A stretch of 64,000 nt of DNA from IMGVR_UViG_3300017528_000567:186001-250000, one strand, 5' to 3'; shown: positions 15,127-42,008, numbered from the stretch's first letter. Translations and numbers: made by a program. The notes: generated from the letters alone by a model not told the origin.

Positions 15127-15696
15127 CTAGGTCCTGGTTACACCAGTAGGATGGACCTCGAAGCCAATCTTACGGCCGTCCCTCAAAAACTCTTGAGCAG
15201 CGCGAGACAAGAGGGATGACACTAGAGAGATGAAAGGCAGGTGCTCCCCATCCTCGCAGGTGGCCGCCCCCGGAGCCGCGGCATCGATCACGAAGTACTC
15301 ATCCCAGACGACGCGTCCATATTGCCCATTCGCTGCCAACGCACCATGCAGACACGGGGTGCCCCTAGAGCGAGCAAAGGACTGAACGAGCTCACGTGAA
15401 GGCGCGTTGTCCAAGCAATCGACCAAGAGGTCCGCATCACCAAGCAGCTTCTGCTGATTGTACAGGGTGAGCCGGTGCGGCACTGCTACGAGCTTAACCC
15501 CAAACAAGAACTGCATGGTCTGCTGGAGAGCCGGCGCCTTGCTGCGGTCAACCTGCGTCTTGCTATGGAACTGTGACAGAGGGCTCTTCGACTTCACACG
15601 ACCATCATCGATGACTGTCAGCTCTGCGAAGTTCCGTGCGCACAAAATGAAATGGGAGCCAAGGGCTCCCACTCCGATGACCGTGACCTTTCTCAT
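15127..15696 (-). CDS. ThiF/E1-like ubiquitin-activating adenylyltransferase
   Basis: MRKVTVIGVGALG nucleotide-binding loop, DDGRV, DCLDN, candidate catalytic Cys in ATCE. Confidence 0.88.
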   Translation of the reverse strand: MRKVTVIGVGALGSHFILCARNFAELTVIDDGRVKSKSPLSQFHSKTQVDRSKAPALQQTMQFLFGVKLVAVPHRLTLYNQQKLLGDADLLVDCLDNAPSRELVQSFARSRGTPCLHGALAANGQYGRVVWDEYFVIDAAAPGAATCEDGEHLPFISLVSSLLSRAAQEFLRDGRKIGFEVHPTGVTRT

Positions 15697-15866
15697 TCTG
15701 TCTTTCGCCTTGTCCATGTCCCAGTCTCCGGATCAAGCACGCAACCCCCAGGGCATTTAGGCGGTGGACCACCGCCCCACCCGTGCTGACTCTCTACTAT
15801 GGCGCCACACGCTAGACAGCTATATCTGTGCACCCTCTGCCAGCCTTCCCAACCTAGGAAATACAT
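15693..15866 (-). CDS. 57-aa zinc-ribbon protein (missed by ORF track)
   Basis: MYFLGWEGWQRVHRYSCLACGAIVESQHGWGGGPPPKCPGGCVLDPETGTWTRRKTE; TGATG overlap with Ubl stop, ATGA overlap with E1 start. Confidence 0.7.
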   Translation of the reverse strand: MYFLGWEGWQRVHRYSCLACGAIVESQHGWGGGPPPKCPGGCVLDPETGTWTRRKTE

Positions 15867-16144
15867 CAGGCCCCGGCACCAAAAGGCGTCTTGGGTCTCA
15901 AAAACATGACGTGATGCCCTCGCTCAGCAGAAGCGCTGAACCGATCCACCATGTAATCGCTGAGCTCGACATCCTTATCCAGAGGGATGCCAGGAAGGCT
16001 GCCCGTCCGGATCGCCTCCTCAACAAGCCCTTTGACTACAGAATCCGTCGTGTCGAAAGGCACAGGATCCGGGAGGTCCGCGTTGACCCCAGCATAGGTA
16101 ACGTTGACGCGAGCTTCAAAGTCTTCCATCGATCCTCCAATCAA
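15866..16144 (-). CDS. Ubiquitin-like (beta-grasp) small protein
   Basis: 92 aa between JAB and E1; C-terminus LRPKTPFG-AGA; fold inferred from size and context. Confidence 0.7.
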   Translation of the reverse strand: MIGGSMEDFEARVNVTYAGVNADLPDPVPFDTTDSVVKGLVEEAIRTGSLPGIPLDKDVELSDYMVDRFSASAERGHHVMFLRPKTPFGAGA

Positions 16145-16515
16145 AATCTAGAGAGCGTGCGCAGCTCCGACATCCATTCGGGCTCGTACATCACTGGCAC
16201 CGTGCCGTACGAAAGCTTGCCAGGCCCCGACCAAAACAACTCCACAGACTCGTCTCGGCTGGTGACCCACCACACGAGCCGCTTACCAAGAGCCGACTCA
16301 ACCGCCGCAAATGTCGTCAAATCCTCATCTGACGGTACAGGCACACCCGAACCTGGGTGACTATGCGCGAAGCCCAGCACCTCGTCTCTGTGATCCCAGA
16401 TGATGGTCCACAGGTCCCGACTATCCGGCAGCGATCCGACTGCGCGGCCCTCGGGGAGATGCCAAAAAAGGGGCTCGCTATCGAGATTGACTAGTACGCC
16501 GGCTTCGAGGCTCAT
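16141..16515 (-). CDS. JAB/MPN metallo-isopeptidase
   Basis: N-terminal EAG and HSHPGSGVPVPSDED JAMM motif. Confidence 0.88.
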   Translation of the reverse strand: MSLEAGVLVNLDSEPLFWHLPEGRAVGSLPDSRDLWTIIWDHRDEVLGFAHSHPGSGVPVPSDEDLTTFAAVESALGKRLVWWVTSRDESVELFWSGPGKLSYGTVPVMYEPEWMSELRTLSRF

Positions 16516-16538
16516 CTTCACCTATTACACCGAAATCG

Positions 16539-17498
16539 TTAATCGACGTGGCGGAACACAACGAGCTTCCCCTCCCGGTCCGCTTGCCTAATGACTGCCG
16601 GCAAACTCTCGAGAGTGAAGAACGAATCACCTTTGGTACCACGCTCAAAATCATCGTCGTCCCCGTGAGCTGTCAGACAGATACCAGCATCGAGAATCCG
16701 CAGACTGCGGCGATCGCAGGTGCATTCAAAGCGACGACCGTCGAGCCGAAACCGCACCACCATCTCTTCCGGACGATGCGACCTCCGGTACTCCAGATAC
16801 GTCACGCCGCCAACCGTCAGTGCAGCTCGCGCCGCCGCCTCGAAATCGACACCAGCCATCTCCCGACGCGATGCACCATCACCCAGCCTCGAGAGAAGAT
16901 CCCGACGACGGGCCTCTTGATCTCTCGCTTCTTCCTCTCGACGGAGCTGGATCTCTACCTCCGCTCGCCTGCGGTCGGCCTCGATACGCTGCCAGCGCGC
17001 CATGCGAAAAGCGGCGTCCAACGCAGGCGTGACCCCAGGGACGTCATCGACGGTTGCCTTGCGATCATAATAGGCCGCTCGCACCTCCACATCCGGCCCA
17101 AGAGGCATCTCCTGTTGAATGAAGACCAGCGGCCCACCCTCCTGGGCGCGACCCGCTGAGATCCGAACAAACCGATCCAAGCCAGGGTCGATCAAATGCA
17201 CGCGCTCGGAATAAGCGGCGATGACTTTAGGATGAGGGTCCACCCGAACATCGGCGGCCATGATTCGGTCGCCCACCAAGTACCCGACGACCCGCTGAGA
17301 CAAGCTGTCCGGCTCCGGGTAACAGACCTCCATCACCCTCGCTTTACGGCCAGTCAACTGGAACTTGACCCAAGCGTGTTCCTTGGGAAGAACCCCCTCG
17401 ATAGACCAAACTCGAACGCCGGAACAGAGAGACCTACCACCAACCCAAGGCAGCACGATTGAGCTGCCCTCTGTCTCAAGCAAGTCTCTCCAGCCCAT
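16539..17498 (-). CDS. Unknown protein of the Ubl operon (charged helix, C-terminal Cys motifs)
   Basis: 319 aa; RRAEVEIQLRREEEARDQEARRR; FECTC...DAGICL. Confidence 0.75.
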   Translation of the reverse strand: MGWRDLLETEGSSIVLPWVGGRSLCSGVRVWSIEGVLPKEHAWVKFQLTGRKARVMEVCYPEPDSLSQRVVGYLVGDRIMAADVRVDPHPKVIAAYSERVHLIDPGLDRFVRISAGRAQEGGPLVFIQQEMPLGPDVEVRAAYYDRKATVDDVPGVTPALDAAFRMARWQRIEADRRRAEVEIQLRREEEARDQEARRRDLLSRLGDGASRREMAGVDFEAAARAALTVGGVTYLEYRRSHRPEEMVVRFRLDGRRFECTCDRRSLRILDAGICLTAHGDDDDFERGTKGDSFFTLESLPAVIRQADREGKLVVFRHVD

Positions 17499-17510: not shown

Positions 17511-19382
17511 TCATGCCGCCCACGTGGGCTTCACCAGCAGCTTAGTCTTCAAGATCGTGTCTACCAGGGACACCCGCGGAACAAAGACCGGGCCGCCGTG
17601 AGTCTTACCCACTGGAGTAGCTGAGATCAACGCACGCAGAACACGAGGGATAGCATAGACGTCGGAAAAGGTCTGCGGTTCGATCATGAAGCAGGGGATC
17701 CCCAGTCTTGCTGCAGTGTCGCGCACACTAGACGACACGCACTCACGCACCTTGAGTAGACCGAACGCAACCGGGTTGATACCAGACTCGCGCACGGCCA
17801 CTTCGAATGTTGAGTGCTCTTCTTCATCGCCGACGAAAATCATCAGCGCATCCTCATCTGCCGTTGGCTTGTACTTGCTAAGAACCCGCACGCCCTGGGA
17901 GTGCAATGTGCCGCCGCCCGCTGTAATGCCGCGGAACGCGTTCTCAACGCCAGCTGCTGATGCGTGAGTGATCTTGACCTCACGACCCGAGGTGCTGAAC
18001 ACCGAGACATGCAGCTGCTCCGGTGGGAACGCCTGCAAGAACTTTGCGATATACTGCTTGGCCTGAACGATCGCGTTGTTCATTGATCCCGAGATATCCA
18101 CGATCACATAGATGCGGAGACCCTTGACGACCTCAGCCACAGCTAGCTTGACCGCGTTATCCGCCGCTTCGTGTAGCTTCTCTTGAGTGGCCAAAGACTT
18201 GACGCGAGTCGCGATGTTCGCAGCACGCATATCCTCAGCAGCCTGGATCGCCCTCTCCCAACGCCCTCGAACCTCCTGGACCTCCAAGAGCCCGAGCTCC
18301 TCAAGCGTCGGAGTGGCGATGATCAAATCCTTGTCAGACATCGACCCAACCTCGATTGCCGCAGCGACGATCGCACGAGTGAGCCCCTGACCCTTCGGTA
18401 AAAGCCCGACCACGCGCTTGAAGCTTGGCCTGGTGCGAACAATCGCCTCACAAATCTGTTGCTCGGTGAAGCCTTCCCAAGATTCAGCCGCCTGCACCGC
18501 CTGGCCAATCGCAATCGAGCGACGGCCGTCCTGGGCCTGCACCTGCTTCCAGCGCAGAGCCTCAAAGAATCGAGGCGTCGCCGGCCGATAGTGAATGCGA
18601 CGCGCGAGCTCCATCACCGTACGACGGAAGCCAGCCTTCACCAGCCCGTCGAGCAGCTTTGGGTTTTCCTCACGGTAAAGCAACCACTTCTCTACAGCCT
18701 TAGTCCAACGACCCAAGAATGGATTGCGCGCCGAGCTCCCAAAGCCGAGCTCGCGGTTGATCTCCGCCACGCCTGGCAGCATCAACACGTCATGCACCCG
18801 GAGCAAGAGCTTCGGGTTGAACGTCTTTACATCCTTAAAGTCCTTGCCGCCCAAGAGCAACATCGCCTCGCCAACGTCGCGTAGATCGTCATCGAAGAAG
18901 GCGACTTTGCCAGCATCGATCACCGGGTCGCCCTTGCGAGACTGAACCAAGAGAAATGCCGCCATGATCACCTTGAGGTCACGGCGCTCCTGCAATAGCA
19001 AGAACTCGTGCGACGCCCAGCGAGCCGCAAACTCGTTGTCGAGTTTCCAGACCTCAGCAACCTGGCGATACAACCAAACCGCCACGTCTGCGAAGATCCC
19101 TGCCGGCTGGTAGCGGCCAACGACCCGATTCACATCCTTGATGCGACCGTCATCCTTGAGCTTGCCAAGCTTAACCTTGGCGGTCTTCTTCCCAACCTTG
19201 CGGAGCTCGTAGACGACCTTATCCCCGTCTTCAACGACGTGGGTGACCGGAAGCCACTTTACCCCGATCACAGAGCCGACGTCCGGGATCACAATACCAG
19301 CGCGATTGTGGACACAGTGATCCGAATACCCAATCACAGTCTCGAGAATGCGCTCTGCCGGGCCTAGGTTTTCGTTTGCCAT
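17511..19382 (-). CDS. Ro60/TROVE-like protein with C-terminal vWA domain
   Basis: vWA DISGSM, GGT, VGDEE; helical N-part DNEFAARWAS..RRDLKVIMAAFL and MELARRIHYRP reminiscent of TROVE motifs. Confidence 0.65.
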   Translation of the reverse strand: MANENLGPAERILETVIGYSDHCVHNRAGIVIPDVGSVIGVKWLPVTHVVEDGDKVVYELRKVGKKTAKVKLGKLKDDGRIKDVNRVVGRYQPAGIFADVAVWLYRQVAEVWKLDNEFAARWASHEFLLLQERRDLKVIMAAFLLVQSRKGDPVIDAGKVAFFDDDLRDVGEAMLLLGGKDFKDVKTFNPKLLLRVHDVLMLPGVAEINRELGFGSSARNPFLGRWTKAVEKWLLYREENPKLLDGLVKAGFRRTVMELARRIHYRPATPRFFEALRWKQVQAQDGRRSIAIGQAVQAAESWEGFTEQQICEAIVRTRPSFKRVVGLLPKGQGLTRAIVAAAIEVGSMSDKDLIIATPTLEELGLLEVQEVRGRWERAIQAAEDMRAANIATRVKSLATQEKLHEAADNAVKLAVAEVVKGLRIYVIVDISGSMNNAIVQAKQYIAKFLQAFPPEQLHVSVFSTSGREVKITHASAAGVENAFRGITAGGGTLHSQGVRVLSKYKPTADEDALMIFVGDEEEHSTFEVAVRESGINPVAFGLLKVRECVSSSVRDTAARLGIPCFMIEPQTFSDVYAIPRVLRALISATPVGKTHGGPVFVPRVSLVDTILKTKLLVKPTWAA

Positions 19383-22010: not shown

Positions 22011-22015
22011 ATTCT

Positions 22016-33274: not shown

Positions 33275-33295
33275 CCGAATGAGCCTTCACTACGT

Positions 33296-33370: not shown

Positions 33371-33378
33371 AAACTTCT

Positions 33379-33780
33379 TCACTCCCCAGAGTCACAGACT
33401 CGGCACCACAAGCCGCATACCCGTCCCATCACTCTATTGTAGAGAGCGTGCTTTGCCGGGTCCAACTCGTTGTCTGTGATGGCTGACTCCAGAAGTGTTG
33501 TCAGCTGCTTCCTGACCCGGTCTAGGCTTGTGTGCTCGGTATCGACAAACACGCCTTGAGGCGTCTGCACGATCGTGAACTCCCCCCATCCGACTCCGCT
33601 CTCAGAGTGCTGCAACACTACGGCAAGCCGTTCGGGCTCGACCTGCCCCCTATATTGCCCGGCCTTGGGGACACCCTCTTTGTAATACGCATGTTGCAGC
33701 CGCGCTCGTGTTGGCAAACCATCCAAGAGTTCTCGAAAGCTTGTCCTCATATCGGCAATCCCTATTTCGTGGTCGTTCAC
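33379..33780 (-). CDS. Hypothetical protein, paralog A (start approximate)
   Basis: Similar to 33777..34145. Confidence 0.65.
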   Translation of the reverse strand: MNDHEIGIADMRTSFRELLDGLPTRARLQHAYYKEGVPKAGQYRGQVEPERLAVVLQHSESGVGWGEFTIVQTPQGVFVDTEHTSLDRVRKQLTTLLESAITDNELDPAKHALYNRVMGRVCGLWCRVCDSGE

Positions 33781-34145
33781 TCTTCCGGGAAACAGACGCG
33801 ACACCGCGGGCCGCATCCGCGCTTCATGACTTCATTGTAGAGAGCGTGCTTCTCGGGGTCTTGATCATTGTCCGTGATGGCTGAGTCTACTAGCGCCGCC
33901 AGGTATTTCTTGACCCGCTCTGAGCTCATACACTCCGTGTTGAGAAACACGCCTTGAGCGGTTTGCTTGATCGTGATCTCGCCGAAACCGAAGCCACTCT
34001 CGCTGAACTGGAGCCCGACCACAACCATCTCCGGCGGAGTGTCCCACTCTCGCCCCCCGTCCTTGGGTACGCCCGCCTTGCTATCGGCGTAGCACAACGA
34101 CACATGGGTTGGCAGACCCTTCAGAACCTCTATAAAATCAGGCAT
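33777..34145 (-). CDS. Hypothetical protein, paralog B
   Basis: SESGFGFGE...SAITDN..DPEKHALYN..CGPRCRVC. Confidence 0.7.
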   Translation of the reverse strand: MPDFIEVLKGLPTHVSLCYADSKAGVPKDGGREWDTPPEMVVVGLQFSESGFGFGEITIKQTAQGVFLNTECMSSERVKKYLAALVDSAITDNDQDPEKHALYNEVMKRGCGPRCRVCFPEE

Positions 34146-34220
34146 GGTCGCTCCGTCGGGTAACGATCCCGCAGCCTTGCCACCTTATGAGAGTGGGGCA
34201 CCCACCATGGGCGCGGAGCG
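34145..34220 (-). tRNA. tRNA-Met/Ile2(CAT), reduced D arm
   Basis: CGCTCCG/CGGAGCG acceptor, loop CTCATAA, CCA. Confidence 0.75.
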
Positions 34221-34221
34221 A

Positions 34222-34297
34222 TGGTAGCGACGAGAGGATTTGAACCTCCACTAAACACGGCCTAAACGTGTCGCCTCTGCCGTTGGGCTACGTCGCC
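34222..34297 (-). tRNA. tRNA-Leu(TAG), short variable arm
   Basis: Loop TTTAGGC, CCA. Confidence 0.82.
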
Positions 34298-34317
34298 AAA
34301 CAATCACAATCACTTCT

Positions 34318-34453
34318 TAGAGGCCGCCCGTGGAGTCGAACCACTGACTTGTAAGAGCGATGCGGTGTCCCCTCGCGGGAACGAGTTCATCACTCTGGGA
34401 GCTTGCGCTCCAGCTCCGTAGGCTGGCGGGGAACCGATCCCCTGTAGGCGGCC
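34318..34453 (-). ncRNA. Expanded tRNA-like RNA
   Basis: GGCCGCCT/GGGCGGCC acceptor, GTGG-TTCGACT-CCAC T arm, multi-hairpin middle domain. Confidence 0.7.
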
Positions 34454-34462
34454 AAGACTTCG

Positions 34463-34601
34463 TTCTCGCTCGAGTGCCGGACCTGGTTAGCTTGTATGCC
34501 TGGTTAATAGCCGGGTGCGAGTACCATCTCGCGTTCATAGGGCTTGCGCCTTATGTCAGGATTCGAACCTGTGCGTGTAAGGTCATGCTAGTGAACGAGA
34601 A
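34463..34601 (-). ncRNA. YrlA-like (circularly permuted tRNA-mimic) RNA
   Basis: Paired termini TTCTCGTTC/GAGCGAGAA; order T arm, GCAA-capped acceptor-like stem, D-like arm. Confidence 0.7.
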
Positions 34602-34602
34602 C

Positions 34603-34715
34603 TGGTGGGGCCTGAAAGAGTCGAACTTTCAAGGTCTTGTGGGCACTCGAGAGGGATCCTTGCAGACCCGAGGTACTAGTGCCGTGTCAGTAGGCGGCCA
34701 CCCGCCAAAAGCCCC
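34603..34715 (-). ncRNA. Expanded tRNA-like RNA with CCA end
   Basis: GGGGCTT/AGGCCCC-ACCA, GAAAG-TTCGACT-CTTTC, long bulged stem instead of an anticodon arm. Confidence 0.7.
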
Positions 34716-34931
34716 ATGTGACCGTCTTTCCGGCCTGTCACTCAACTCGCTCGATGCCACTCTAGATAGAGGGTGACACAAGCTAACTCCTTGCGTGCTT
34801 GCTACACAGCCGGTGCCGAACAGGACAACCGACAGCGCAATCAATGCGTTCATCTCTATAACTCCGTCGCGCCACAGTGCCATCCCTTCATACACCGAAA
34901 GATCACAAAACCGCGCGACGCACCAAAAAAG

Positions 34932-36098
34932 TCACTTCATCTGAGCAGCCGCGGCTTGCAGAACCGCACGCGTGTCATCTGAAATTCCCGTCAGTTTCTG
35001 CACCATCCACTCAAGAATGACTTTGCCCTTCTGCATGCGCGTGAGGACCTTGGAGCCACCTTGATAGAAGTACTCGCCAAAAACCGCGTTCAGCAGGCGT
35101 TTGCCGCCAAGTCTCACGGAGATCAGCGCCACAGTATCGTGCTCACCCAACACAACAGGCTTGCCATTGAGAACGAGCGTGACCTGATACCCATCCTTGT
35201 TATACGCGCCAGCCTTGGGGTCATTGTAATGACCGGGCTCCGGCCCAAAAGTCGCCACATGCAGCTTGAGCTCGACAACCTGCTTGCGGCCCGCCACTGC
35301 TGGCGCGTCACCGGCAACTTGGCCGGACTCTACTAGCCAGTGCTTGAGAGAGATCTCTGGGCTGGCCGGCAGTTTCTCGGAGAGGCTCCAGCCTCTCGCA
35401 TCCCGCACCTTGGAGTTGAAGCGCCCGTTGTACTCGAAGTCGCCGGTCGGTAGCCCGAACGCCGTCGAGATCTGGCGATGCAGCCACGCCGGGTTACTCT
35501 GCTCGTCCTTCTTGATCGGCAGCTTGTGTGTCTGCATATCCCAGACATCACGCCGCCCACCGCCGCCAACGTAGTAGTCACTTCTTGAGACATGGACAGC
35601 AACCACAAACACATGCTGGTCAGCCGTTCGCCCATAGTACGCATACGCGTGTCGCGAGAACGATGACTCGTCACCCGAGTAGCCCCCCTTATCCCGCTGT
35701 GTCGCGGTCGTGAACTGCCACTCCACCCCACCCGGGATACCAGCGCCAGCTCGGGCCTGCTCCCAAGTGACCACCACATCCTTCGGCGGCGTCCACTGCT
35801 GCCGTGGTGGCGCATCATCAGCCCACGAAGGTTCTGTCTGCGGGACTGGCTGTGATGACCCCGGATCCTCACGGTACAGAGGCTGAGGCTTTTTCGGAAA
35901 GAGCAGATCGTACGCCCGATTGACCTCTTGCATCGCGAAGGTAGAACCGCCGCTATCGGGGTGCACATCGCGTAGCTTCGACCGAACCGCTTTCTTAGCG
36001 TCTGCCTCGGTCGGTGCGTCGTGAGGCCCGAAACCAAGCAAAGCCAGAGCTTCCTGCCTGGTCATCGTGATTCGAGCTTCGCGAAAATCGTACGTCAT
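34932..36098 (-). CDS. Protein with N-terminal DnaJ-like J domain
   Basis: ALALLGF...RDVHPDSGGS...EVNRAYDLL; starts MTYDFR. Confidence 0.75.
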   Translation of the reverse strand: MTYDFREARITMTRQEALALLGFGPHDAPTEADAKKAVRSKLRDVHPDSGGSTFAMQEVNRAYDLLFPKKPQPLYREDPGSSQPVPQTEPSWADDAPPRQQWTPPKDVVVTWEQARAGAGIPGGVEWQFTTATQRDKGGYSGDESSFSRHAYAYYGRTADQHVFVVAVHVSRSDYYVGGGGRRDVWDMQTHKLPIKKDEQSNPAWLHRQISTAFGLPTGDFEYNGRFNSKVRDARGWSLSEKLPASPEISLKHWLVESGQVAGDAPAVAGRKQVVELKLHVATFGPEPGHYNDPKAGAYNKDGYQVTLVLNGKPVVLGEHDTVALISVRLGGKRLLNAVFGEYFYQGGSKVLTRMQKGKVILEWMVQKLTGISDDTRAVLQAAAAQMK

Positions 36099-36283
36099 AC
36101 GTTGGAGCCTCAGAAGCGCAGTAGGCGGCCAAAGAAGGGGTGGCGCGCCCGACTCCCCAGGTTGAGCTCTAGCGCTACACCGGAGCGCGCAGAGCTCGAC
36201 CTGTTCAGGTCGATCCAACAATAGAAAAGCGGTGGAGGGCCGCAGCCTGTTGCGTAATTTGGAAGCGCCGCAGCGACGCAGGA

Positions 36284-36790
36284 CTAGGTCAAGTCAACGC
36301 GTCGATTGAAAGGCTGCGATCGCCAAGCCCCAAAGAGCCCAAACTCTCGCGCCTGGCGGACGGCTGGGACGAGATGCAACCAAGCTTCGTAGGGCATGGA
36401 TCCCCGCATATAGTTACATCTCAAGCAGGCGGGCAGGACGTTGGCTCGAGTATGCGCCAGCGAGTTGTCGATACGGTCAAGAGTGATCCGCATCTCGGTC
36501 TCACCACAATAGCAGCACCCCTGCCTAATCAACGCGGCCACAAAATCGCGATTCAGATCGTTACCCGGCCTACCGCGCTTCTTGTCAGAACTTCTAGAAT
36601 CCGTAACCAGAACCACAACAGGATGGTTAGCTCTGTACCGAGCATCTTTTTTGCTTCGCGCCTCCGGATGGAGAGCCCTTTTGCGCTGCGTACGGCAATT
36701 GCTACACGTCCTCCGTCGGTACCCAGAGGACGAAAGGTCAAAGCCGGACAACGGCTTCTCAACCTGACAAACTCTACAGACCCTTGTCAT
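36284..36790 (-). CDS. HNH endonuclease
   Basis: CRVC, CSNC, CCYCG, LDRIDNSLAHTRANVLPACLRCN. Confidence 0.85.
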   Translation of the reverse strand: MTRVCRVCQVEKPLSGFDLSSSGYRRRTCSNCRTQRKRALHPEARSKKDARYRANHPVVVLVTDSRSSDKKRGRPGNDLNRDFVAALIRQGCCYCGETEMRITLDRIDNSLAHTRANVLPACLRCNYMRGSMPYEAWLHLVPAVRQAREFGLFGAWRSQPFNRRVDLT

Positions 36791-36793
36791 CGT

Positions 36794-36930
36794 TAGTGGG
36801 GGATGAAGGAGTCGAACCTTCTATGCTTGAAAGCACCCGAAAGGGTTCCCGACGACTGCCGAAAACGAGTGTGCGGTGCTGGTCGATGCTTTCGATTTAC
36901 CGTCGAAGTGGGGCCAACCCCCAACCCCCC
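36794..36930 (-). ncRNA. Expanded tRNA-like RNA
   Basis: GGGGGGT/ATCCCCC acceptor, GAAGG-TTCGACT-CCTTC, GAAAGCA/TGCTTTC stem. Confidence 0.68.
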
Positions 36931-36947
36931 AATGGACCGAGTCCCTG

Positions 36948-37016
36948 ACTGCCGCGCCGTCGTTCGACCCAGGTACTCGGCGGAGCTGGGCAACTCTTTG
37001 GCGACGTGGCAGCACC
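36948..37016 (-). ncRNA. Hairpin RNA with Y-RNA-like bulged helix
   Basis: GTTG-CCCAG pairs with CTGGG-T-CGAAC; begins 9 nt after GGTGTA. Confidence 0.45.
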
Positions 37017-37044
37017 TCAGCGAGCTACACCACTAGGGTGCCGC

Positions 37045-37117
37045 AGTGCGGGTAGAGGGAATTGAACCCTCACCTCATGCTTGGCAAGCATGCGTTCGAC
37101 CGTTGAACTATACCCGC
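37045..37117 (-). tRNA. tRNA-Gly(GCC)
   Basis: Loop TTGCCAA. Confidence 0.9.
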
Positions 37118-37134
37118 GAAACTACTGCCACTAC

Positions 37135-38220
37135 TCAAAAGGAGTAGTCGAATAACGCTGATGACGCCGTCTTCTCCTCACCGGCCTCACTCAACACCTT
37201 GTTGAGATGCGCTGCCAGATACTCCGCAATCTTGGCGGGCGTGCCTGACTTGGCGCGGAGCAATGTCTTGGCGCGGTCACCGCCGAAGAAGTTCGTGAAC
37301 TGCTCGACCTTGACCTTGACCACCGCCTGGTCGCGATCCTTCCGATCAAACCCAGCAATGGTGAACTGCAGGCGGCCCTTATCTTTGATGAAGAGTTTGC
37401 AGTACAGCGCCCCACTTCCACCGAGCTGGTGCTCCGACCGGTCGATCGTAAACTCTGCGTCACCCTTGACCTTGACCTTGACCTTGACCTTCGATTCGAG
37501 CCAATCGGCGAACTTGTTGAAGCTCATCGCGCCGGGAGTCTTCTTGACCTCTTCAGCCTTCGCCGCCGCGGCCTCCTCCTGCTCGACCTTCATCTTTGCT
37601 TTCATCTCTTCGGGATCGACAACCGTCGGAGCGACCTTGCCATCGATCAGGTCCTGCACAAGCGGCGCGGCCTTCAGCCCAACTTCCTTGCCGATCGCCG
37701 ACCAAGTTTCCAATTCCTTGCGCGCCTCGCCGAGCTCGTGCATCGACGCTGGCTTCGGCTCACCGTTGATGACCCAAGTCGCCCCCTTCAGTTGGGCTAC
37801 CAGGTGCTTGGTCTGCGCAAATACCAGCGCCTTGATCCCATCAAAGTCAGCCTTCGGAAACTCTTTCATGAACTCCGAGACGGCAGAGGCATTCGAGTAC
37901 CCGGTAAGACCAGCCCACTGAACGTGGTCTTGTGCATCCAGATACATACACCCTGCCACACCCGCATACGTACTGGCCTTGGGTTTGTTCCAGCTCAACG
38001 CGGCATCCTTCTCAGGCTCACCACCCGGATACCACGCCTTCGAAGTCTGCTCGACAAGGCGAAAGCCCTGCCTCGCCTTGAACTCTAGCCATACACGCTT
38101 GCGGCACCTGGCTTTGAAGCCACTAGGATAGTCGTCGATCACATAAGCGTTCTGAGGGCTATCGTGTCCGTACAGAGGTTTCTTGCTGCTGGCGGTGCGC
38201 ACTCGAAAGTCGTAGGTCAT
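37135..38220 (-). CDS. Hypothetical protein (MTYDFRVRTA N-terminus)
   Basis: CTTATG-N13-ATG. Confidence 0.75.
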   Translation of the reverse strand: MTYDFRVRTASSKKPLYGHDSPQNAYVIDDYPSGFKARCRKRVWLEFKARQGFRLVEQTSKAWYPGGEPEKDAALSWNKPKASTYAGVAGCMYLDAQDHVQWAGLTGYSNASAVSEFMKEFPKADFDGIKALVFAQTKHLVAQLKGATWVINGEPKPASMHELGEARKELETWSAIGKEVGLKAAPLVQDLIDGKVAPTVVDPEEMKAKMKVEQEEAAAAKAEEVKKTPGAMSFNKFADWLESKVKVKVKVKGDAEFTIDRSEHQLGGSGALYCKLFIKDKGRLQFTIAGFDRKDRDQAVVKVKVEQFTNFFGGDRAKTLLRAKSGTPAKIAEYLAAHLNKVLSEAGEEKTASSALFDYSF

Positions 38221-38492
38221 GTCTAGAACGTGACATAAGAAGCCTATGGCAGTTAGGGGGCAACGTCCCAATCTATGAAGATCTATTGCAGACTATTTGC
38301 CAGACTATTTTGCACCTACATCTCGAGTGAAAAGCGCTAGGTTTCCCCACCGCGTCCCCTAGCGGACGCCCATTCGCCAAGCCCCCGGCTCGGCTGGTGG
38401 TCATTGCGCTCTGTGCGCTGCTTCTGGCGCGGGCAGGGAGGCACCCTACGCGCCGTAATCCTCTGGTGAGCCCGCTCATAAGAAGGGCTCTC

Positions 38493-38660
38493 ATGACTCA
38501 TTTCGTTTGCTCTAGTTGCGGCGCCGGCGTCCATCACGATGAACACCCGGAAGGCCGGCCTGTCCTTGCCTGCGATTGCGACCCCAACGAAGCCAAGCCG
38601 ATCGAGGTTCCCTACTATTCTGAAGCCGAAGAGTGGGATGACTGGATTCGAAGGCGTTGA
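38493..38660 (+). CDS. Small zinc-binding protein
   Basis: MTHFVCSSCG...CDC. Confidence 0.5.
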   Translation: MTHFVCSSCGAGVHHDEHPEGRPVLACDCDPNEAKPIEVPYYSEAEEWDDWIRRR

Positions 38661-38673
38661 CTCCCGGCACAGC

Positions 38674-38748
38674 TGGCGCACACGACCCGACTCGAACGGG
38701 CATTATCCTGGGTGAAAACCAAGGGTCCTACCATTAGACGACGTGTGC
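38674..38748 (-). tRNA. tRNA-Glu(TTC)
   Basis: Loop TTTTCAC, CCA. Confidence 0.88.
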
Positions 38749-38750
38749 AG

Positions 38751-38870
38751 AGGTCCGTGACGGCGGCATAGAACGCAAGCCTCGCAGCCGGGCGCAGACC
38801 TCGTTGATCAAGCGAGCGCCGCCACTACGACTTAGAAGGTCGCCGCGTATTCTTAAAGCCTGTGTCACGA
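38751..38870 (-). ncRNA. tRNA-like RNA with Arg(TCT)-type anticodon arm and expanded T arm
   Basis: TCGTGAC/GTCACGG-ACC, GCGAC-CTTCTAA-GTCGT, GGCGGC...GCCGCC enclosing about 50 nt. Confidence 0.5.
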
Positions 38871-38872
38871 AC

Positions 38873-38949
38873 CGGCACCCCCACGGGGCGACGATCCCCG
38901 TTCACGTCACTGAGAATGACGTATCCTAACCAACGTAGACGATGGGGGC
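38873..38949 (-). tRNA. tRNA-Glu(CTC)
   Basis: Loop TTCTCAG. Confidence 0.85.
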
Positions 38950-39239
38950 ATGTAACCTGTAACCATACATCATGCAGGCGCTTGAACATTCACCGGCGCC
39001 CGATTGTATTCGCAGGGTCACGCAAACCGAACAGGAGTCGCCATGAAGCCACGCATGACCGCCCTCACTTGCACCTTGCTTGTACGAACCTTCGCCTCTT
39101 TAGAAGCCGGAGCCAAAGAGGTAACCGAGGCACTTGGCTGGGTGAACTATTTTCTCGCCACTTGGATCAGCCTCGACCATTCGAGCTCGGTCGGACGTAA
39201 ACGTGCGGTCAAACTGCCGCCAGCTTCGAACTAGGCGTG

Positions 39240-39317
39240 TGGTGGGTTGTCCAGGAGTCGAACCCGGTTCTACCGCTCTTCAGGCGGTCGCTGAATAACC
39301 GTACTAGCTCACAACCC
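39240..39317 (-). tRNA. tRNA-Phe(GAA)
   Basis: Loop CTGAAGA, CCA. Confidence 0.88.
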
Positions 39318-39319
39318 AT

Positions 39320-39395
39320 AGAGCCCGTGATGGGGATCGAACCCACCGAAGTCCGCGGTACGAGTGCGGTGCCTCACCATTGAGGCGACACGGGC
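39320..39395 (-). tRNA. tRNA-Thr(CGT)
   Basis: Loop CTCGTAC. Confidence 0.85.
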
Positions 39396-39416
39396 AGAAT
39401 CATAAGGCGATCACGC

Positions 39417-40031
39417 TCAAGTCACGGGGCTCTCTATCGGAGCGATTGCGAAGCGGATGCGGCGGACCTGGGCCGTGTTTGCCGAGCCCACTCTGCGCAG
39501 CTGCAGCACAAGCGAAGGTGCGTCGAGTGCATTAGCCGCCAAGATAACAGACCCCGAAAAAGAAGTGTAGAAAGTCAGGTTGTTGGAGCTTTCAGCCCGC
39601 TCCACCCCCGCCCACAAGATTCTAGCCGAGACCCCTGATGTTGAATCCGCGGTCACGACGGCTAGCTCACTGTAAAAGGAGACCAGATAGTTTCCGCCTG
39701 CCAAAAGCCCTGACTGCATCGTAGCCTTGGTAACGTAAGTCGTGCCCGGCTCCGTTTGAACGCCCTCCGAAAACAACGTCTGAGCTCCACGCACGTACCC
39801 CACACCAGTGTGAGTATTACAGACATTGTCGATGGCGGTCAGATCTGCGGCGCTCGGGGTAACGTTGAACTGAAGGACGAGGGTCCCAGTCGCCACAGTG
39901 GAAAAAGTGCTCACACACTTGGCACTGGTAATGGCCGCACCGATCTGCGCCTCAAGGACCTCGATGTTTGGCCAAGAGGTAGTGAGGGCCGAGAAGCCCC
40001 CGGGCACATTCTTAGTGATTTGGTAAGCCAT
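39417..40031 (-). CDS. Hypothetical beta-rich, possibly virion protein
   Basis: Thr/Ser/Ala-rich 204 aa, AAGGA RBS. Confidence 0.65.
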   Translation of the reverse strand: MAYQITKNVPGGFSALTTSWPNIEVLEAQIGAAITSAKCVSTFSTVATGTLVLQFNVTPSAADLTAIDNVCNTHTGVGYVRGAQTLFSEGVQTEPGTTYVTKATMQSGLLAGGNYLVSFYSELAVVTADSTSGVSARILWAGVERAESSNNLTFYTSFSGSVILAANALDAPSLVLQLRRVGSANTAQVRRIRFAIAPIESPVT

Positions 40032-40173
40032 CGGTCGTCCTTTGGACCTTGGTACACCGAGAACTCCCGCCGTCCCATGCCGGCCGCGGCGGAAACCAAA
40101 ATATGCGGTTGCCTACTGATTTGTTCGGGCCGCACCCGGCACTCTCGGGCCTATCTCTCACGTAGGTGGTTCT

Positions 40174-40247
40174 CGGCACGCCGCCCGGGACTCGAACCCG
40201 GATGAAGAGTTTTGGAGGCTCCCATCTTGCCATTAGATGAACGACGT
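40174..40247 (-). tRNA. tRNA-Trp(CCA)
   Basis: Loop CTCCAAA. Confidence 0.87.
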
Positions 40248-40252
40248 AAGAC

Positions 40253-40345
40253 CCACGGGCACCACTGGAACGTCTCGAGGACGACTTACCCAGAGTAACC
40301 GCAACGTTCTTAGAACGACTTACGCGGCTTTGGTGCTGGACGTGG
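40253..40345 (-). ncRNA. Twin-hairpin small RNA
   Basis: Closing stems CCACG/CGTGG and GCACCA/TGGTGC; two GTAAGTCGT..ACGTT hairpins. Confidence 0.55.
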
Positions 40346-40346
40346 T

Positions 40347-40421
40347 TGGTCGAGCTGGCGGGAATTGAACCCGCTGCCTCCTGTTCCCGAAACAGGCGTC
40401 ATACCGATTGACTACAGCTCG
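40347..40421 (-). tRNA. tRNA-Pro(CGG)
   Basis: Loop TTCGGGA, CCA. Confidence 0.9.
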
Positions 40422-40422
40422 T

Positions 40423-40499
40423 TGGTCTAGATGGAGGGATTCGAACCCACGGCCTCACCGCCCCAAACGGTGCGCACTACCAGGCTGTGCTACATCTAG
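40423..40499 (-). tRNA. tRNA-Pro(TGG)
   Basis: Loop TTTGGGG, CCA. Confidence 0.9.
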
Positions 40500-40518
40500 A
40501 TACTCGTCACAACATTCT

Positions 40519-40594
40519 CGGTCGGCCGTAGAGGAGTTGAACCTCTTTCTCCACGTTATCAGCGTGGCAAACTAAACCCTAGTTATAACGGCCG
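40519..40594 (-). tRNA. tRNA-Ile(GAT)
   Basis: Loop CTGATAA. Confidence 0.85.
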
Positions 40595-40654
40595 TGGCTA
40601 AAGCCGCCTCTCGCGAGACGGCCTCGTTGCTCCTTCCGCACATGGCGGATGAGC

Positions 40655-40846
40655 TCAGTTCGGGAGATCTTCCTCTGAGTTGACCAACGCCACCACGAGC
40701 TCGGTACCATTCGGCCCGATGCCTTCGGCGTTGAGGTAGACCTCATCAAGCGACGCCGAGTACCTCTGCCTCTTGATACCGATGGTCACGGGCCGGTCAG
40801 GGTCCGTGCATTGACTCAAGATGCGGATGAGCTCGCCGACGGTCAT
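40655..40846 (-). CDS. Small phage protein (MTVGELIRIL)
   Basis: Typical phage small-ORF start motif. Confidence 0.6.
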   Translation of the reverse strand: MTVGELIRILSQCTDPDRPVTIGIKRQRYSASLDEVYLNAEGIGPNGTELVVALVNSEEDLPN

Positions 40847-40857
40847 ACGAAAAAAAT

Positions 40858-40991
40858 AGAGAGCGCTCGAGGAATCAGGCAGGATAACCTCTTTCGAGGG
40901 CGACTGGGATCGAACCAGCAACATTCTGTGTACAAGACAGATGCTCTACCAAATGAGCTACGCGTGTATGCCTGATGAAGTGAACGCTCTC
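40858..40991 (-). ncRNA. Y-like RNA: conserved terminal stem enclosing a tRNA-Thr(TGT)-like domain with a broken acceptor
   Basis: GAGAGCG-TTCACTTC-ATCAGGCA...TGCCTGAT-TCCTCGAG-CGCTCTC, followed by a U tract. Confidence 0.7.
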
Positions 40992-41067
40992 GGATGCGAA
41001 CCCCTGGAGTCGAACCAGGTTTCTCCGGCTTATGAGGCCGGCGGATTGCCGTCTTCCCCGGCCGCCA
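40992..41067 (-). tRNA. tRNA-Met(CAT), irregular acceptor
   Basis: CCGGC-CTCATAA-GCCGG, canonical T arm. Confidence 0.72.
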
Positions 41068-41094
41068 TGTAGAGAACTTACACCAAAAGAAAAT

Positions 41095-41226
41095 GAGAGC
41101 AGCGCTCGAGAGATCAAGCAGAGAGTTCGCAAAGCGGGGATTGAACCCGCCTAGTCTTTTTTGGATGAAAGGTGCCCCACCTTGGGGCGATTTGCTTGTG
41201 TGCTCGATCGAAGTGAATGCTGCTCG
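41095..41226 (-). ncRNA. Y-like RNA: same terminal stem enclosing a degenerate tRNA domain
   Basis: GAGCAGC-ATTCACTTC-GATCGAGCA...TGCTTGATC-TCTCGAGC-GCTGCTC; D arm GCCCC/GGGGC; T arm GCGGG-TTCAATC-CCCGC; U tract. Confidence 0.7.
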
Positions 41227-41299
41227 GCTCCTAGGGAGGGTAACGATCCCCCAACCACGCCGTTAACAGCGGCGCGCTCTACCGTTGAGCTACCTAGGA
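41225..41299 (-). tRNA. tRNA-Asn(GTT)
   Basis: Loop CTGTTAA. Confidence 0.87.
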
Positions 41300-41302
41300 A
41301 AA

Positions 41303-41380
41303 TGGCTGGGACGGAGGGCCTCGAACCCCCAAATCACTTGGTTAACAGCCAAGCGGCTTACCTGCTTTGCCTACATCCCA
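41303..41380 (-). tRNA. tRNA-Asn(GTT), second copy
   Basis: Loop CTGTTAA, CCA. Confidence 0.87.
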
Positions 41381-41408
41381 ATGAACCGGGGACACCCCGG
41401 CAGAAACT

Positions 41409-41624
41409 TTAGAAGCAGCTCTCAACGCCCATCCCGATCGGAGCGGGGCGATGATACTGACAGCGGACTTTCTCGAGCTGCAGCTTGAGCTTACCGTCCG
41501 CGCCGACCACGTGTTGAAAATAGTGCCCGTGAGCCACGCCATCTTGGATGGCATCTGTGGAGGGCTGCAGGACTGCGATCCCACAAATGCCACACACCCC
41601 TGGTCTGATGTTCTTGTTCGGCAT
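41409..41624 (-). CDS. Small Cys/His-containing protein
   Basis: CGIC...CQYH; GGAG RBS. Confidence 0.55.
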   Translation of the reverse strand: MPNKNIRPGVCGICGIAVLQPSTDAIQDGVAHGHYFQHVVGADGKLKLQLEKVRCQYHRPAPIGMGVESCF

Positions 41625-41639
41625 TGGTCTCCCCGATGG

Positions 41640-42008
41640 TCACCAATCGTAACAAGGGCGTTTGAAGTCCTCCAACGAGTGCCGGCTCGGAACCGTCTGC
41701 CCTGACCGCGCTCCAAGCATGTCCTTGCGAACCACTGCCGTCCCGTCAGCTCGAACGTCTTCTCGATACCACGCGCCAAAGTTTACAGCCTTCGGGACCC
41801 TCTGGCCCTCTACCACGAACAAGCACAAGCGAGGTGGTCCCCCTAATGTGCCGGCCATGTCCGTAAATTCGAGGATTGCTTTACCCGCTAGCAGCCGGTT
41901 AATCACCTTCAAGGTGGCTATACACGGCTTGTCCGGACCCAGGATCCTCATGAGATAGTTGAACCTCTTCGTTTCAAAATCTATCGCTTTTGGCATTGAC
42001 TGGCTCAA
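41640..42008 (-). CDS. Hypothetical protein
   Basis: 122 aa ORF. Confidence 0.55.
   Translation of the reverse strand: MSQSMPKAIDFETKRFNYLMRILGPDKPCIATLKVINRLLAGKAILEFTDMAGTLGGPPRLCLFVVEGQRVPKAVNFGAWYREDVRADGTAVVRKDMLGARSGQTVPSRHSLEDFKRPCYDW

What the first reader, a model, noticed from the sequence alone, without database searches (positions are those of the whole stretch)
34463..41226. Family of Y-RNA-like tRNA mimics sharing a UUCACU / CUCGAGCG terminal stem motif
Seen: three RNAs (34463-34601, 40858-40991, 41095-41226) have paired termini with the same internal-loop motif (5' TTCACT, 3' CTCGAGCG), while the flanking base pairs differ yet still pair. Each carries a tRNA-like domain in a different form: one has YrlA order (T arm, loop-closed acceptor, D arm), one wraps an almost intact tRNA-Thr with a broken acceptor, one wraps a degenerate cloverleaf. 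34603-34715 has a variant (CACTAG/CTCGAGTG). Known: bacterial Y RNAs (YrlA) are tRNA mimics bound by Ro60 and linked to rtcB. Inference: a new Y-like class with a non-canonical protein-binding stem, probably for the divergent TROVE protein, possibly decoys for host anticodon nucleases.
Basis: partly seen in the sequence, partly recalled or inferred. Interest (0 to 1): 0.9.

Follow-up and report, generated by a model that had tools for sequence, protein, structure and literature searches.

The report
Stem-clamped tRNA mimics in huge phages
The three RNAs are real members of a large, undescribed family of tRNA-shaped RNAs in huge phages, whose two ends pair into a stem with a conserved loop and which usually lie beside a gene for a Ro60-like RNA-binding protein, much as bacterial Y RNAs do.

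Summary
Three minus-strand RNAs (34462-34602, 40859-40991, 41097-41225) pair their 5' and 3' ends and share UUCACU/CUCGAG. Each encloses a tRNA-like body. The fourth "variant" (34603-34715) is a different tRNA-like RNA.

Two covariance models found about 100 further members in about 45 related huge-phage contigs. Covariation is strong: 92-96% of cells pair, against 25-44% when partners are slid.

The module is grafted onto tRNA bodies in two circularly permuted ways. In one it extends the acceptor end (B, C). In the other it leaves the variable-loop position of a body with a closed acceptor stem (A).

Anticodon loops keep tRNA geometry, but the triplet is unconstrained: A34 is 29% against 4% in neighbouring tRNAs. 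Decoding tRNAs are therefore unlikely.

The RNAs usually follow a conserved operon that starts with a protein whose predicted fold best matches Ro60/TROVE. Rfam YrlA does not match.

Best reading: a new Y-RNA-like class. Protein binding and the decoy idea are untested.

The parts
34462..34602 (-). RNA A, permuted ('A-type') member. Order: P1 (10 bp including UUC/GAG), internal loop, P2, UACACGC junction, T arm, acceptor-like stem capped by a GCAA tetraloop, D arm, hairpin with a 7-nt loop (CUAUUAA).
   Evidence: Sequence. Fold z = -3.4. Model R2 scores 158.7 bits. Homologues L133:11840-11979 and L143:4497-4638 carry compensatory changes.
40859..40991 (-). RNA B, standard-order ('B-type') member. 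Order: P1, loop, P2, UACACGC, then a tRNA-Thr(UGU)-like cloverleaf with a 3-bp acceptor stem and an extra CCUCGAAAGAGG hairpin, then P2' and P1'. A U-run follows.
   Evidence: Sequence. Fold z = -4.8. Rfam tRNA 50.3 bits to model positions 5-66. Model R1 scores 147.2 bits. Acceptor analysis.
41097..41225 (-). RNA C, a degenerate B-type member. It starts directly after tRNA-Asn (41226-41299).
   Evidence: Sequence. Fold z = -4.3. Model R1 scores 61.1 bits. The homologue L133:7650-7777 has UCC/GGG in place of UUC/GAG. The RNA is absent from a nearly identical contig.
34590..34595 (-). 5' motif UUCACU of A. UUC pairs with GAG; the C of the invariant C-A closes P1.
34469..34474 (-). 3' motif CUCGAG of A (invariant CUC-G).
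40979..40984 (-). 5' motif UUCACU of B.
40866..40871 (-). 3' motif CUCGAG of B.
41212..41217 (-). 5' motif UUCACU of C.
41105..41110 (-). 3' motif CUCGAG of C.
17511..19382 (-). Ro60-like protein: an N-terminal beta domain, helical repeats and a C-terminal VWA domain. It is the candidate protein partner and the first gene of a conserved operon.
   Evidence: Pfam finds only VWA. AlphaFold pLDDT 87.7, pTM 0.79. The Foldseek top five full-length hits are all Ro60/TROVE: 9kop, 9l5y, 1yvr, 1yvp, 2i91. 1605 homologues on contigs up to 620 kb.
15127..17498 (-). Rest of the conserved operon: a 319-aa protein (16539-17498), a JAB-like protein (16141-16521) and an E1-like ThiF protein (15127-15717). In relatives the A/B RNA cluster follows ThiF.
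40995..41065 (-). tRNA-Met-like gene (CAU) between C and B. B begins 3 nt after it. The unit 'tRNA-Met then B-type RNA' recurs in L133 and in Virus Rctr197k.
   Evidence: Rfam tRNA 35.6 bits

Best explanation
A, B and C belong to a large family of 120-150-nt RNAs derived from tRNAs and encoded by a clade of huge phages.

Shown:
- Each RNA is a tRNA-shaped body whose acceptor end is unavailable. In B-type it is clamped by the module; in A-type it is closed by a loop.
- The body is joined to a common module. The 5' and 3' ends form a 10-bp stem (P1) closed by an invariant C-G pair. An internal loop follows, starting with A on the 5' strand and ending with CUC on the 3' strand. Then come a second stem (P2) and a UACAMGC junction.
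- The module is attached either at the acceptor end (B, C) or at the variable-loop position of a circularly permuted body (A).
- The anticodon loop keeps tRNA geometry, but the triplet is free to vary.
- The genes lie inside tRNA arrays, butted against neighbouring tRNAs. In most relatives they directly follow an operon that starts with a protein of predicted Ro60 fold.

Inferred:
- The RNAs are cut out of polycistronic tRNA transcripts by the enzymes that process the flanking tRNAs.
- They do not decode.
- They work like bacterial Y RNAs. The P1-loop-P2 module would be the binding site for the Ro60-like ring protein. The exposed tRNA-like body would engage tRNA-binding host or phage factors, either gating or tethering the protein or soaking up such factors.
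For: Structure and family:
- Model R1 finds 64 full-length matches of at least 60 bits in 1.32 Mb of related loci. Ordinary tRNAs match only the core, at 51.3 bits or less. In 520 kb of unrelated viral DNA the best score is 34 bits.
- In the R1 alignment 96% of cells pair, 26 of 28 pairs show double changes, and the covariation score is 0.775. Shuffled controls give 0.21 and slid controls 0.14 or less.
- Model R2 finds about 38 permuted members. 92% of cells pair, 37 of 39 pairs show double changes, score 0.703.
- The motif is nearly invariant. 5' CA occurs in 58 of 64 B-type and 29 of 38 A-type RNAs. 3' CUCG occurs in 61 of 64 and 36 of 38.

Not decoders:
- A34 occurs in 27 of 92 family members, against 28 of 654 canonical tRNAs in the same loci (p = 2e-12).
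- There are 28 different triplets among 60 B-type loops. Positions 32, 33, 37 and 38 stay tRNA-like.
- Acceptor stems are capped by tetraloops or reduced to 3 bp in many members, including the window copies.

Link to the Ro-like gene:
- 45 of 57 non-redundant loci carry at least one member within 10 kb on the same strand, at a median of 4.2 kb downstream. Some lie within about 100 nt upstream.
- The operon Ro-like, p319, JAB, ThiF is present in 50-54 of 58 loci.
- The Ro60 fold is supported.

Precedent:
- Y RNAs carry the Ro60 site in the stem formed by their two ends, and bacterial Y RNAs mimic tRNA in two different arm orders (PMC4201824).
- A phage Ro60 binds phage-encoded Y-like RNAs (PMC12135203).
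Against: - No expression or binding data exist.
- Pfam TROVE does not match the protein or its remote relatives. The Foldseek TM-scores are only 0.31-0.48.
- The conserved RNA motif differs from the GNCGAA/CGAA Ro-binding motif and lies on the other strand.
- The window's own copies are 15-22 kb from the Ro-like gene.
- The RNAs always sit in tRNA arrays, which themselves surround the Ro-like gene. The linkage could therefore reflect the arrays rather than the protein.
- The Ro-like gene looks like a core gene of the clade, so co-occurrence is weak evidence.
- Some members keep 7-bp acceptor stems followed by NCCA, and ARAGORN calls them tRNAs.
- The covariation counts come from alignments fitted to the models.
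Confidence: 0.5

Rival explanations
1. They are unusual tRNA precursors. A leader-trailer helix (P1-loop-P2) directs processing, and the permuted A-type genes are rearranged into working tRNAs. This could happen by cleavage and RtcB ligation, as with permuted tRNA genes of algae and archaea. Alternatively they could function as two-piece tRNAs held together by the helix.
For: - A-type RNAs have the 3' acceptor strand before the 5' strand, with 6-7 pairs in 36 of 40.
- 13 of 40 have N-CCA directly after the 3' strand, followed by a short spacer before G1.
- 14 of 64 B-type RNAs have NCCA after the acceptor stem.
- ARAGORN members tRNAs.
- The phage encodes RtcB at 5906-7360.
Against: - Most A-type acceptor stems, including the window's, are capped by 4-6-nt loops such as GCAA, GAAA or UUCG. 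These leave no leader or trailer.
- Many B-type acceptor stems have only 3-5 pairs.
- A34 in 29% of members and an apparently unconstrained triplet are not what a decoding set looks like.
- The CCA frequency (22-33%) is below that of neighbouring canonical tRNAs (39%), so it looks like a remnant.
- The loop is a symmetric-type internal loop, not a bulge-helix-bulge.
- RtcB is near in only 4 of 58 loci.
Confidence: 0.2
2. They are free-standing decoys or sponges for tRNA-targeting host defences (anticodon nucleases) or for tRNA-modifying enzymes, and act without the Ro-like protein. The clamp merely protects them from exonucleases and from entering translation.
For: - The anticodon loop geometry is conserved while the triplet varies widely, even between close relatives: UGU in the window's B against AUU in L135.
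- The acceptor end is blocked.
- There are several copies per genome, inside tRNA arrays that are generally thought to counter tRNA-directed defences.
Against: - A nearly invariant C-A/CUC-G loop and UACAMGC junction are not needed for mere end protection. They point to a specific ligand.
- The triplet composition looks close to random rather than matched to known nuclease targets.
- There is no functional evidence.
Confidence: 0.15
3. The clamp is a processing or cassette-boundary element of the tRNA arrays. It could be a double-strand RNase site or a recombination hotspot that moves tRNA cassettes. The enclosed tRNA-like bodies would then be decaying tRNA genes with no function of their own.
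For: - RNA C is replaced by a different tRNA-like cassette in an otherwise nearly identical contig, with the junction at its 3' end.
- HNH endonuclease genes lie in the arrays.
- Members abut neighbouring tRNAs.
Against: - D-arm and T-arm tertiary nucleotides and the anticodon-loop geometry are maintained across Ro-like protein identities as low as 45-50%.
- The RNA cluster is about 90% identical between the window and L133, while the neighbouring protein is 59% identical.
- Decaying pseudogenes would not keep compensatory changes in every helix.
Confidence: 0.1

Closest known systems
YrlA-type bacterial Y RNAs (Rfam RF02553; Chen et al. 2014, PMC4201824)
   Same: - Length of about 100-140 nt.
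- The 5' and 3' ends pair in a stem that carries a short conserved motif.
- The rest mimics tRNA.
- A-type members have the YrlA arm order: T arm, closed acceptor-like stem, D arm.
- They are encoded close to a Ro60-type gene, also in phages.
   Different: - No match to the Rfam model at E up to 10.
- The conserved motif is C-A/CUC-G in an internal loop, with CUCG on the 3' strand. It is not GNCGAAN0-1G on the 5' strand.
- The module leaves the body at the variable-loop or acceptor position, so a complete anticodon arm is present. In YrlA the stem replaces the anticodon arm.
- The partner protein is far from canonical TROVE in sequence.
Deinococcus radiodurans Yrn1 Y RNA (as described in PMC4201824)
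   Same: According to that paper the arm order differs from YrlA: an anticodon-like arm lies between D-like and T arms, and the terminal stem sits at the acceptor position. That is the topology of B-type members.
   Different: Yrn1 has a partial D arm and a 6-nt 'anticodon' loop. B-type members have full cloverleaves with 7-nt loops and often a residual acceptor stem.
Yrl1/Yrl2 of Thermus phage phiLo with phage Ro60 (PMC12135203; PDB 9kop, 9l5y)
   Same: These are phage-encoded Y-like RNAs next to a phage Ro60. That Ro60 is the best structural match of the window's protein.
   Different: The phiLo RNAs were picked by a CGAA motif in a large internal bulge and are not described there as tRNA mimics. 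The protein here has an extra N-terminal beta domain and heads an operon with JAB and E1-like genes.
Permuted tRNA genes of red/green algae and archaea
   Same: A-type members encode the T arm and 3' acceptor strand upstream of the 5' acceptor strand, D arm and anticodon arm. The transcript ends pair with each other. A third of relatives have NCCA plus a spacer between the acceptor strands.
   Different: There is no bulge-helix-bulge motif. Most members have the acceptor stem sealed by a tetraloop. The anticodons are atypical. The same terminal module also clamps non-permuted bodies.

Membership tests
YrlA (Rfam RF02553) | Score at or above the family's gathering threshold (69 bits) with the Rfam covariance model | tested here: not met
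   A, B and C have no YrlA match even at E up to 10. The only YrlA match in the region (41249-41359, 29.5 bits) spans two tandem tRNA-Asn genes and is an artefact.
YrlA (Rfam RF02553) | GNCGAAN0-1G motif near the 5' end (PMC4201824) | tested here: not met
   The 5' strand reads N7-UUCACU. A CGA(G/A) string occurs only on the 3' strand, and across the family only CUCG is invariant.
YrlA (Rfam RF02553) | tRNA-like domain in the order (V) - T arm - closed acceptor-like stem - D arm | tested here: met
   Met for A and about 38 A-type relatives. Not met for B and C, which have standard tRNA order.
Y RNAs in general | Small RNA whose 5' and 3' ends form a long stem carrying a conserved bulge or loop used as the Ro60 site | tested here: inconclusive
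   The stem and a conserved internal loop are present and covary. Whether the loop is a Ro60 site is unknown.
Y RNAs in general | Encoded next to a Ro60 orthologue (bacteria and phages) | tested here: inconclusive
   At family level 45 of 57 loci have a member within 10 kb of the Ro-like gene on the same strand. The window's three copies are 15-22 kb away, and the tRNA arrays confound the linkage.
Y RNAs in general | Physical binding to Ro60 | not testable with these tools
   Needs EMSA, RIP or CLIP.
tRNA (Rfam RF00005) | Complete cloverleaf with a 7-bp acceptor stem and a free 3' end | tested here: not met
   B matches only model positions 5-66 (50.3 bits) and has 3 acceptor pairs. A and C have no tRNA match and ARAGORN calls none of the three.
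tRNA (Rfam RF00005) | Anticodon usage typical of decoding tRNAs | tested here: not met
   A34 in 27 of 92 family members against 28 of 654 neighbouring tRNAs, p = 2e-12.
Permuted tRNA genes | 3' half encoded upstream of the 5' half | tested here: met
   True of A and A-type relatives.
Permuted tRNA genes | Bulge-helix-bulge motif formed by the transcript ends | tested here: not met
   The ends form P1, an opposed internal loop (3-7 by 5 nt) and P2. There are no staggered 3-nt bulges 4 bp apart.
Permuted tRNA genes | Intervening sequence between the acceptor strands that can be removed to free the CCA end and G1 | tested here: not met
   The window's A has a GCAA tetraloop. NCCA plus a spacer is present in 13 of 40 relatives only.
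Ro60/TROVE proteins (for the 17511-19382 product) | Match to Pfam TROVE (PF05731) | tested here: not met
   No match at E up to 5 in 18 members, nor in remote relatives at E up to 0.01. An hmmsearch against PDB sequences finds only VWA proteins.
Ro60/TROVE proteins (for the 17511-19382 product) | Helical-repeat domain followed by a C-terminal VWA domain, with overall fold similar to solved Ro60 structures | tested here: met
   AlphaFold pLDDT 87.7, pTM 0.79. The Foldseek top five hits (9kop, 9l5y, 1yvr, 1yvp, 2i91) align over 536-573 columns, with E from 7e-8 to 1e-5, probability 1.00 and TM 0.31-0.48. VWA domain at residues 425-519.

The most novel reading that the evidence does not exclude
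The RNAs may be the RNA subunits of a previously unknown phage ribonucleoprotein system. In it a Ro60-like ring, encoded with ubiquitin-like conjugation enzymes (E1, JAB), would be loaded with interchangeable tRNA look-alikes of two circularly permuted designs. Their hypervariable anticodon loops would act as baits for host tRNA-directed defence proteins or other anticodon-binding proteins. That would make it a programmable 'tRNA-bait' counter-defence rather than an RNA quality-control particle.
Probability: 0.15. Interest if true: 0.92.

Novelty: new variant of a known kind. Interest (0 to 1): 0.78.

Why it matters
- It adds a large, well-supported RNA family to the short list of tRNA-mimicking Y-like RNAs: about 100 members seen here, with two permuted architectures sharing one conserved module.
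- It ties that family to a very divergent Ro60-like protein that looks like a core gene of a widespread clade of huge phages. This gives a concrete RNA-protein pair to test. It also offers a natural example of one protein-binding module grafted onto a tRNA body at two different positions.
- It has a practical consequence. tRNA finders call a share of these RNAs as tRNAs, often with odd A34 anticodons. This inflates and distorts tRNA inventories of huge phages.
- In the one GenBank relative (Virus Rctr197k) both members are unannotated.

Tried and rejected
- **Megablast of 33000-42000 against GenBank phages:** no match.
- **Exact-pattern scan of viral contigs** for TTCACT...GTTCRA...CTCGAGCG: only the window's own two contigs were true. 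L008 and L063 paired by chance and lack tRNA features.
The family became visible through blastn and the covariance models.
- **Loci fetched through the 378-aa neighbour protein:** L137-L142 hold no clear members. L143 holds two A-type copies that the exact-motif scan missed.
- **K-turn or bulge-helix-bulge reading of the loop:** rejected by inspection, since there are no tandem G-A pairs and no staggered bulges.
- **Intrinsic terminators or promoters round the RNAs:** none beyond chance. The U-runs after P1 more likely belong to the leader of the next tRNA.
- **Sequence-level link of the protein to TROVE** (Pfam, PDB hmmsearch, profile search of 1.84 billion representatives followed by Pfam): none. 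The first AlphaFold model, from a shallow alignment, was too poor (pTM 0.43). A deeper alignment fixed this.
- **RtcB as a regular neighbour:** rejected (4 of 58 loci).
- **Scan of cellular genomes for the family:** not attempted. The conserved bases are too few for the pattern tool to give a usable signal.

Full report
**Setting**

The window is part of a 255-kb IMG/VR contig. All genes run on the minus strand and G+C is about 0.59. It carries:
- clamp-loader genes, a chaperonin, RtcB and several VWA proteins;
- an E1-like ThiF protein and a SpoU methylase;
- two PAS-rich hybrid histidine kinases and DNA methylases;
- 38 tRNA genes.

It is a huge phage. Its only relative in GenBank phages is the metagenomic 'Virus Rctr197k'.

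**The observation**

The minus strand reads as three RNAs: A 34462-34602, B 40859-40991 and C 41097-41225.
- Each begins with a 7-nt segment that pairs with its last 7 nt. The segments differ between copies.
- Each has UUCACU after the 5' segment and CUCGAG before the 3' segment.
- The combined pattern occurs three times, against 0.40 expected. The extra requirement of paired flanks makes chance negligible by my own estimate of about 0.002 per window.
- All three fold better than any of 200 shuffles.
- In the folds UUC pairs with GAG. The terminal stem P1 therefore has 10 pairs and the internal loop is 5' ACU(N) against 3' (N)CUC. A second stem, P2, follows.

- B holds a tRNA match of 50.3 bits to Rfam model positions 5-66. 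Only three acceptor pairs are left, and a small hairpin is inserted.
- A has a T arm, an acceptor-like stem sealed by GCAA, a D arm and a hairpin with a 7-nt loop.
- C is a worn cloverleaf.

The 'variant' at 34603-34715 is a different thing. It is a tRNA-like RNA with its own 7-bp acceptor stem, T arm and ACCA end, and its CACU and AGUG simply pair. Neither model built later matches it.

**Relatives**

The exact motif finds nothing outside the window's own contigs.

The protein at 17511-19382 has 1605 homologues on contigs of up to 620 kb. I fetched 68 loci round it. I fetched further loci through the 378-aa neighbour protein.

Blastn with the RNAs then found diverged copies. Their folds show the same architecture with different stem sequences. 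Examples of P1:
- GAGAGUG/CACUCUC
- GAAAGCG/CGCUUUC
- ACUCACG/CGUGAGU
- GGAAGUGC/GCGCUUCC

In the L133 copy of C, UCC/GGG replaces UUC/GAG.

**B-type model (R1)**

A covariance model from eight B-type sequences gave 64 full-length matches of 60-147 bits in 1.32 Mb of non-redundant related loci.
- Ordinary tRNAs match only the core, at 51.3 bits or less.
- 520 kb of unrelated viral DNA gave nothing above 34 bits.
- On the resulting alignment 96% of cells pair and 26 of 28 pairs show changes on both sides.
- The covariation score is 0.775, against 0.21 for shuffles and 0.14 or less for slid partners.
- All ten P1 pairs covary.

**A-type model (R2)**

A second model, built from three A-type sequences, found about 38 full-length members. 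In that alignment 92% of cells pair and 37 of 39 pairs show double changes.

Both alignments were fitted to their models, which flatters the counts. The slid controls, and pairs such as UA 25 / CG 24 / GC 9 / AU 5 with no mismatch, still leave little doubt.

**What is conserved**

- The C-G pair closing P1 is present in 61 of 64 B-type members.
- 5' C-A occurs in 58 of 64 B-type and 29 of 38 A-type members.
- 3' CUC-G occurs in 61 of 64 and 36 of 38.
- After P2 comes a UACA(C/A)GC junction.

The same module is joined to the tRNA body in two ways.
- In B-type RNAs it extends from the acceptor end of a normal-order cloverleaf. The acceptor stem has 3-7 pairs.
- In A-type RNAs the body is circularly permuted: T arm, 3' acceptor strand, a loop of 2-26 nt, 5' acceptor strand, D arm, anticodon-like arm. 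The module leaves at the variable-loop position.

**Are they tRNAs?**

Arguments for:
- 13 of 40 A-type RNAs have N-CCA directly after the 3' acceptor strand.
- 14 of 64 B-type RNAs have NCCA after the acceptor stem.
- ARAGORN members tRNAs.

Arguments against:
- Most A-type acceptor stems are sealed by short stable loops.
- Many B-type stems are stumps.
- CCA is no more frequent than in neighbouring canonical tRNAs, where it is 39%.
- The anticodon triplet looks unconstrained although the loop keeps tRNA geometry: 7 nt, C32 80%, U33 83%, purine-37 98%.
- A34 occurs in 27 of 92 members, against 28 of 654 canonical tRNAs in the same loci (p = 2e-12).

I therefore read them as tRNA-derived mimics, not decoders. 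The window's three copies are clearly of the blocked kind.

**Context**

The RNAs sit in tRNA arrays. The base before P1 is normally the 3' end of a tRNA. A few bases after P1 comes a short U-run and then the GG that starts the next tRNA. This suggests, as an inference, release by the enzymes that process the neighbours.

Linkage to the Ro-like gene:
- In 45 of 57 non-redundant loci at least one member lies within 10 kb of the Ro-like gene on the same strand.
- A- and B-types are usually adjacent.
- The median distance is 4.2 kb downstream. Some lie within about 100 nt upstream.
- Six of the twelve loci without a member have truncated flanks.

The stretch in between is a conserved operon: Ro-like protein, a 320-aa protein, small proteins, a JAB-like protein and an E1-like ThiF protein. 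It is present in 50-54 of 58 loci. The RNA cluster follows ThiF.

In Virus Rctr197k both an A-type (46.9 bits) and a B-type RNA (62.6 bits) lie unannotated at that spot, flanking a tRNA-Met.

In the window itself the RNAs have moved 15-22 kb upstream. A nearly identical contig has a different cassette in place of C. RtcB is within 10 kb in only 4 of 58 loci.

**The protein**

Sequence methods see only a VWA domain. A first AlphaFold model was poor. With a deeper alignment of 49 sequences the model reached pLDDT 87.7 and pTM 0.79.

Its five best full-length PDB matches are all Ro60/TROVE structures, led by the Ro60 of Thermus phage phiLo. E-values run from 7e-8 to 1e-5 and TM-scores from 0.31 to 0.48.

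The architecture is helical repeats followed by a C-terminal VWA domain, as in Ro60. There is an extra N-terminal beta domain.

**Comparison with what is known**

According to the literature:
- Bacterial and phage Y RNAs lie next to Ro60 genes.
- They carry the presumed Ro60 site (GNCGAA, 5' strand) in the stem formed by their ends.
- They mimic tRNA, in two arm orders: YrlA, and Yrn1 of Deinococcus (PMC4201824).
- A phage Ro60 binds two phage Y-like RNAs and host PNPase (PMC12135203).
- TROVE proteins were noted in a few jumbo phages (PMC7824862).

The present family shares the design but fails the YrlA tests. There is no Rfam match. The motif is different and on the other strand. The point of attachment is different, so a full anticodon arm is present. 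Literature searches found no description of this family.

**Verdict**

- The interpretation as a new Y-like class of tRNA mimics is the best-supported reading. It rests on architecture, covariation, genomic linkage and a predicted fold, not on any binding or expression data.
- The main rival is that some members are unusual, partly permuted tRNA precursors.

Noticed in passing
window 34603-34715 (-): A 113-nt tRNA-like RNA with a 7-bp acceptor stem (GGGGCUU/AGGCCCC), a T arm and an encoded ACCA. Its D and anticodon regions are aberrant. It abuts the 5' end of RNA A. It is 94% identical in L133 and about 73% identical in L094:14910-15017. Rfam gives only a 14-bit tRNA-Sec match.
   Followed up: partly
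window 34318-34452 (-): A 135-nt tRNA-like RNA with a 7-bp acceptor stem (GGCCGCC/GGCGGCC), a T arm and four extra hairpins (fold z = -3.3). Homologues lie next to A- or B-type RNAs in L133, L129/L130:15147-15271, L135:13202-13320, L128:16731-16785 and L077:16808-16941. It may be a third RNA family of these clusters.
   Followed up: partly
window 15127-19451 (-); L128:10001-15714: Conserved operon of Ro60-like/VWA protein, a 320-aa protein, small proteins, a JAB-like protein and an E1-like ThiF protein. It is present in 50-54 of 58 related loci. A ubiquitin-like conjugation set coupled to a Ro-like protein is unusual.
   Followed up: partly
L001:4960-5180 versus L002:4960-5160 (window 41097-41225): A contig otherwise nearly identical over the 460 bases compared lacks RNA C. 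It carries instead a tRNA-Asn(GUU)-like gene with a long variable arm. The junction lies at the 3' end of C, which suggests cassette exchange inside the tRNA array.
   Followed up: partly
window 26082-28040 and 28199-31960 (-): Two hybrid histidine kinases with multiple PAS domains, HisKA, HATPase and receiver domains, encoded in the middle of a phage tRNA region. A homologue is present in L133.
   Followed up: no
window 14265-14354 (-): ARAGORN calls a 90-nt tRNA-Arg(UCU) with a long extra arm. It lies at the position after ThiF where relatives carry the A/B RNA cluster. Neither model matches it.
   Followed up: partly
window 41249-41359 (-): The only Rfam YrlA match in the region (29.5 bits, below threshold) spans the T arm of one tRNA-Asn and the D arm of the next. 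Tandem tRNAs can imitate the YrlA arm order, which is a trap for automated Y RNA calls.
   Followed up: yes
window 13664-14200 and 36284-36790 (-): HNH or endonuclease-VII-like genes sit inside the tRNA arrays. They are possible homing endonucleases that drive cassette turnover.
   Followed up: no
L144 (KX853510.1) 11129-13078: In Virus Rctr197k the Ro-like gene is annotated only as a misc_feature 'similar to conserved hypothetical protein'. It may be interrupted there. The A-type (21644-21820) and B-type (21969-22097) RNAs are not annotated.
   Followed up: partly
L135:15498-15851: ARAGORN finds a tmRNA gene (tag ANDNGFAVAA) inside the tRNA array of a related phage contig.
   Followed up: no
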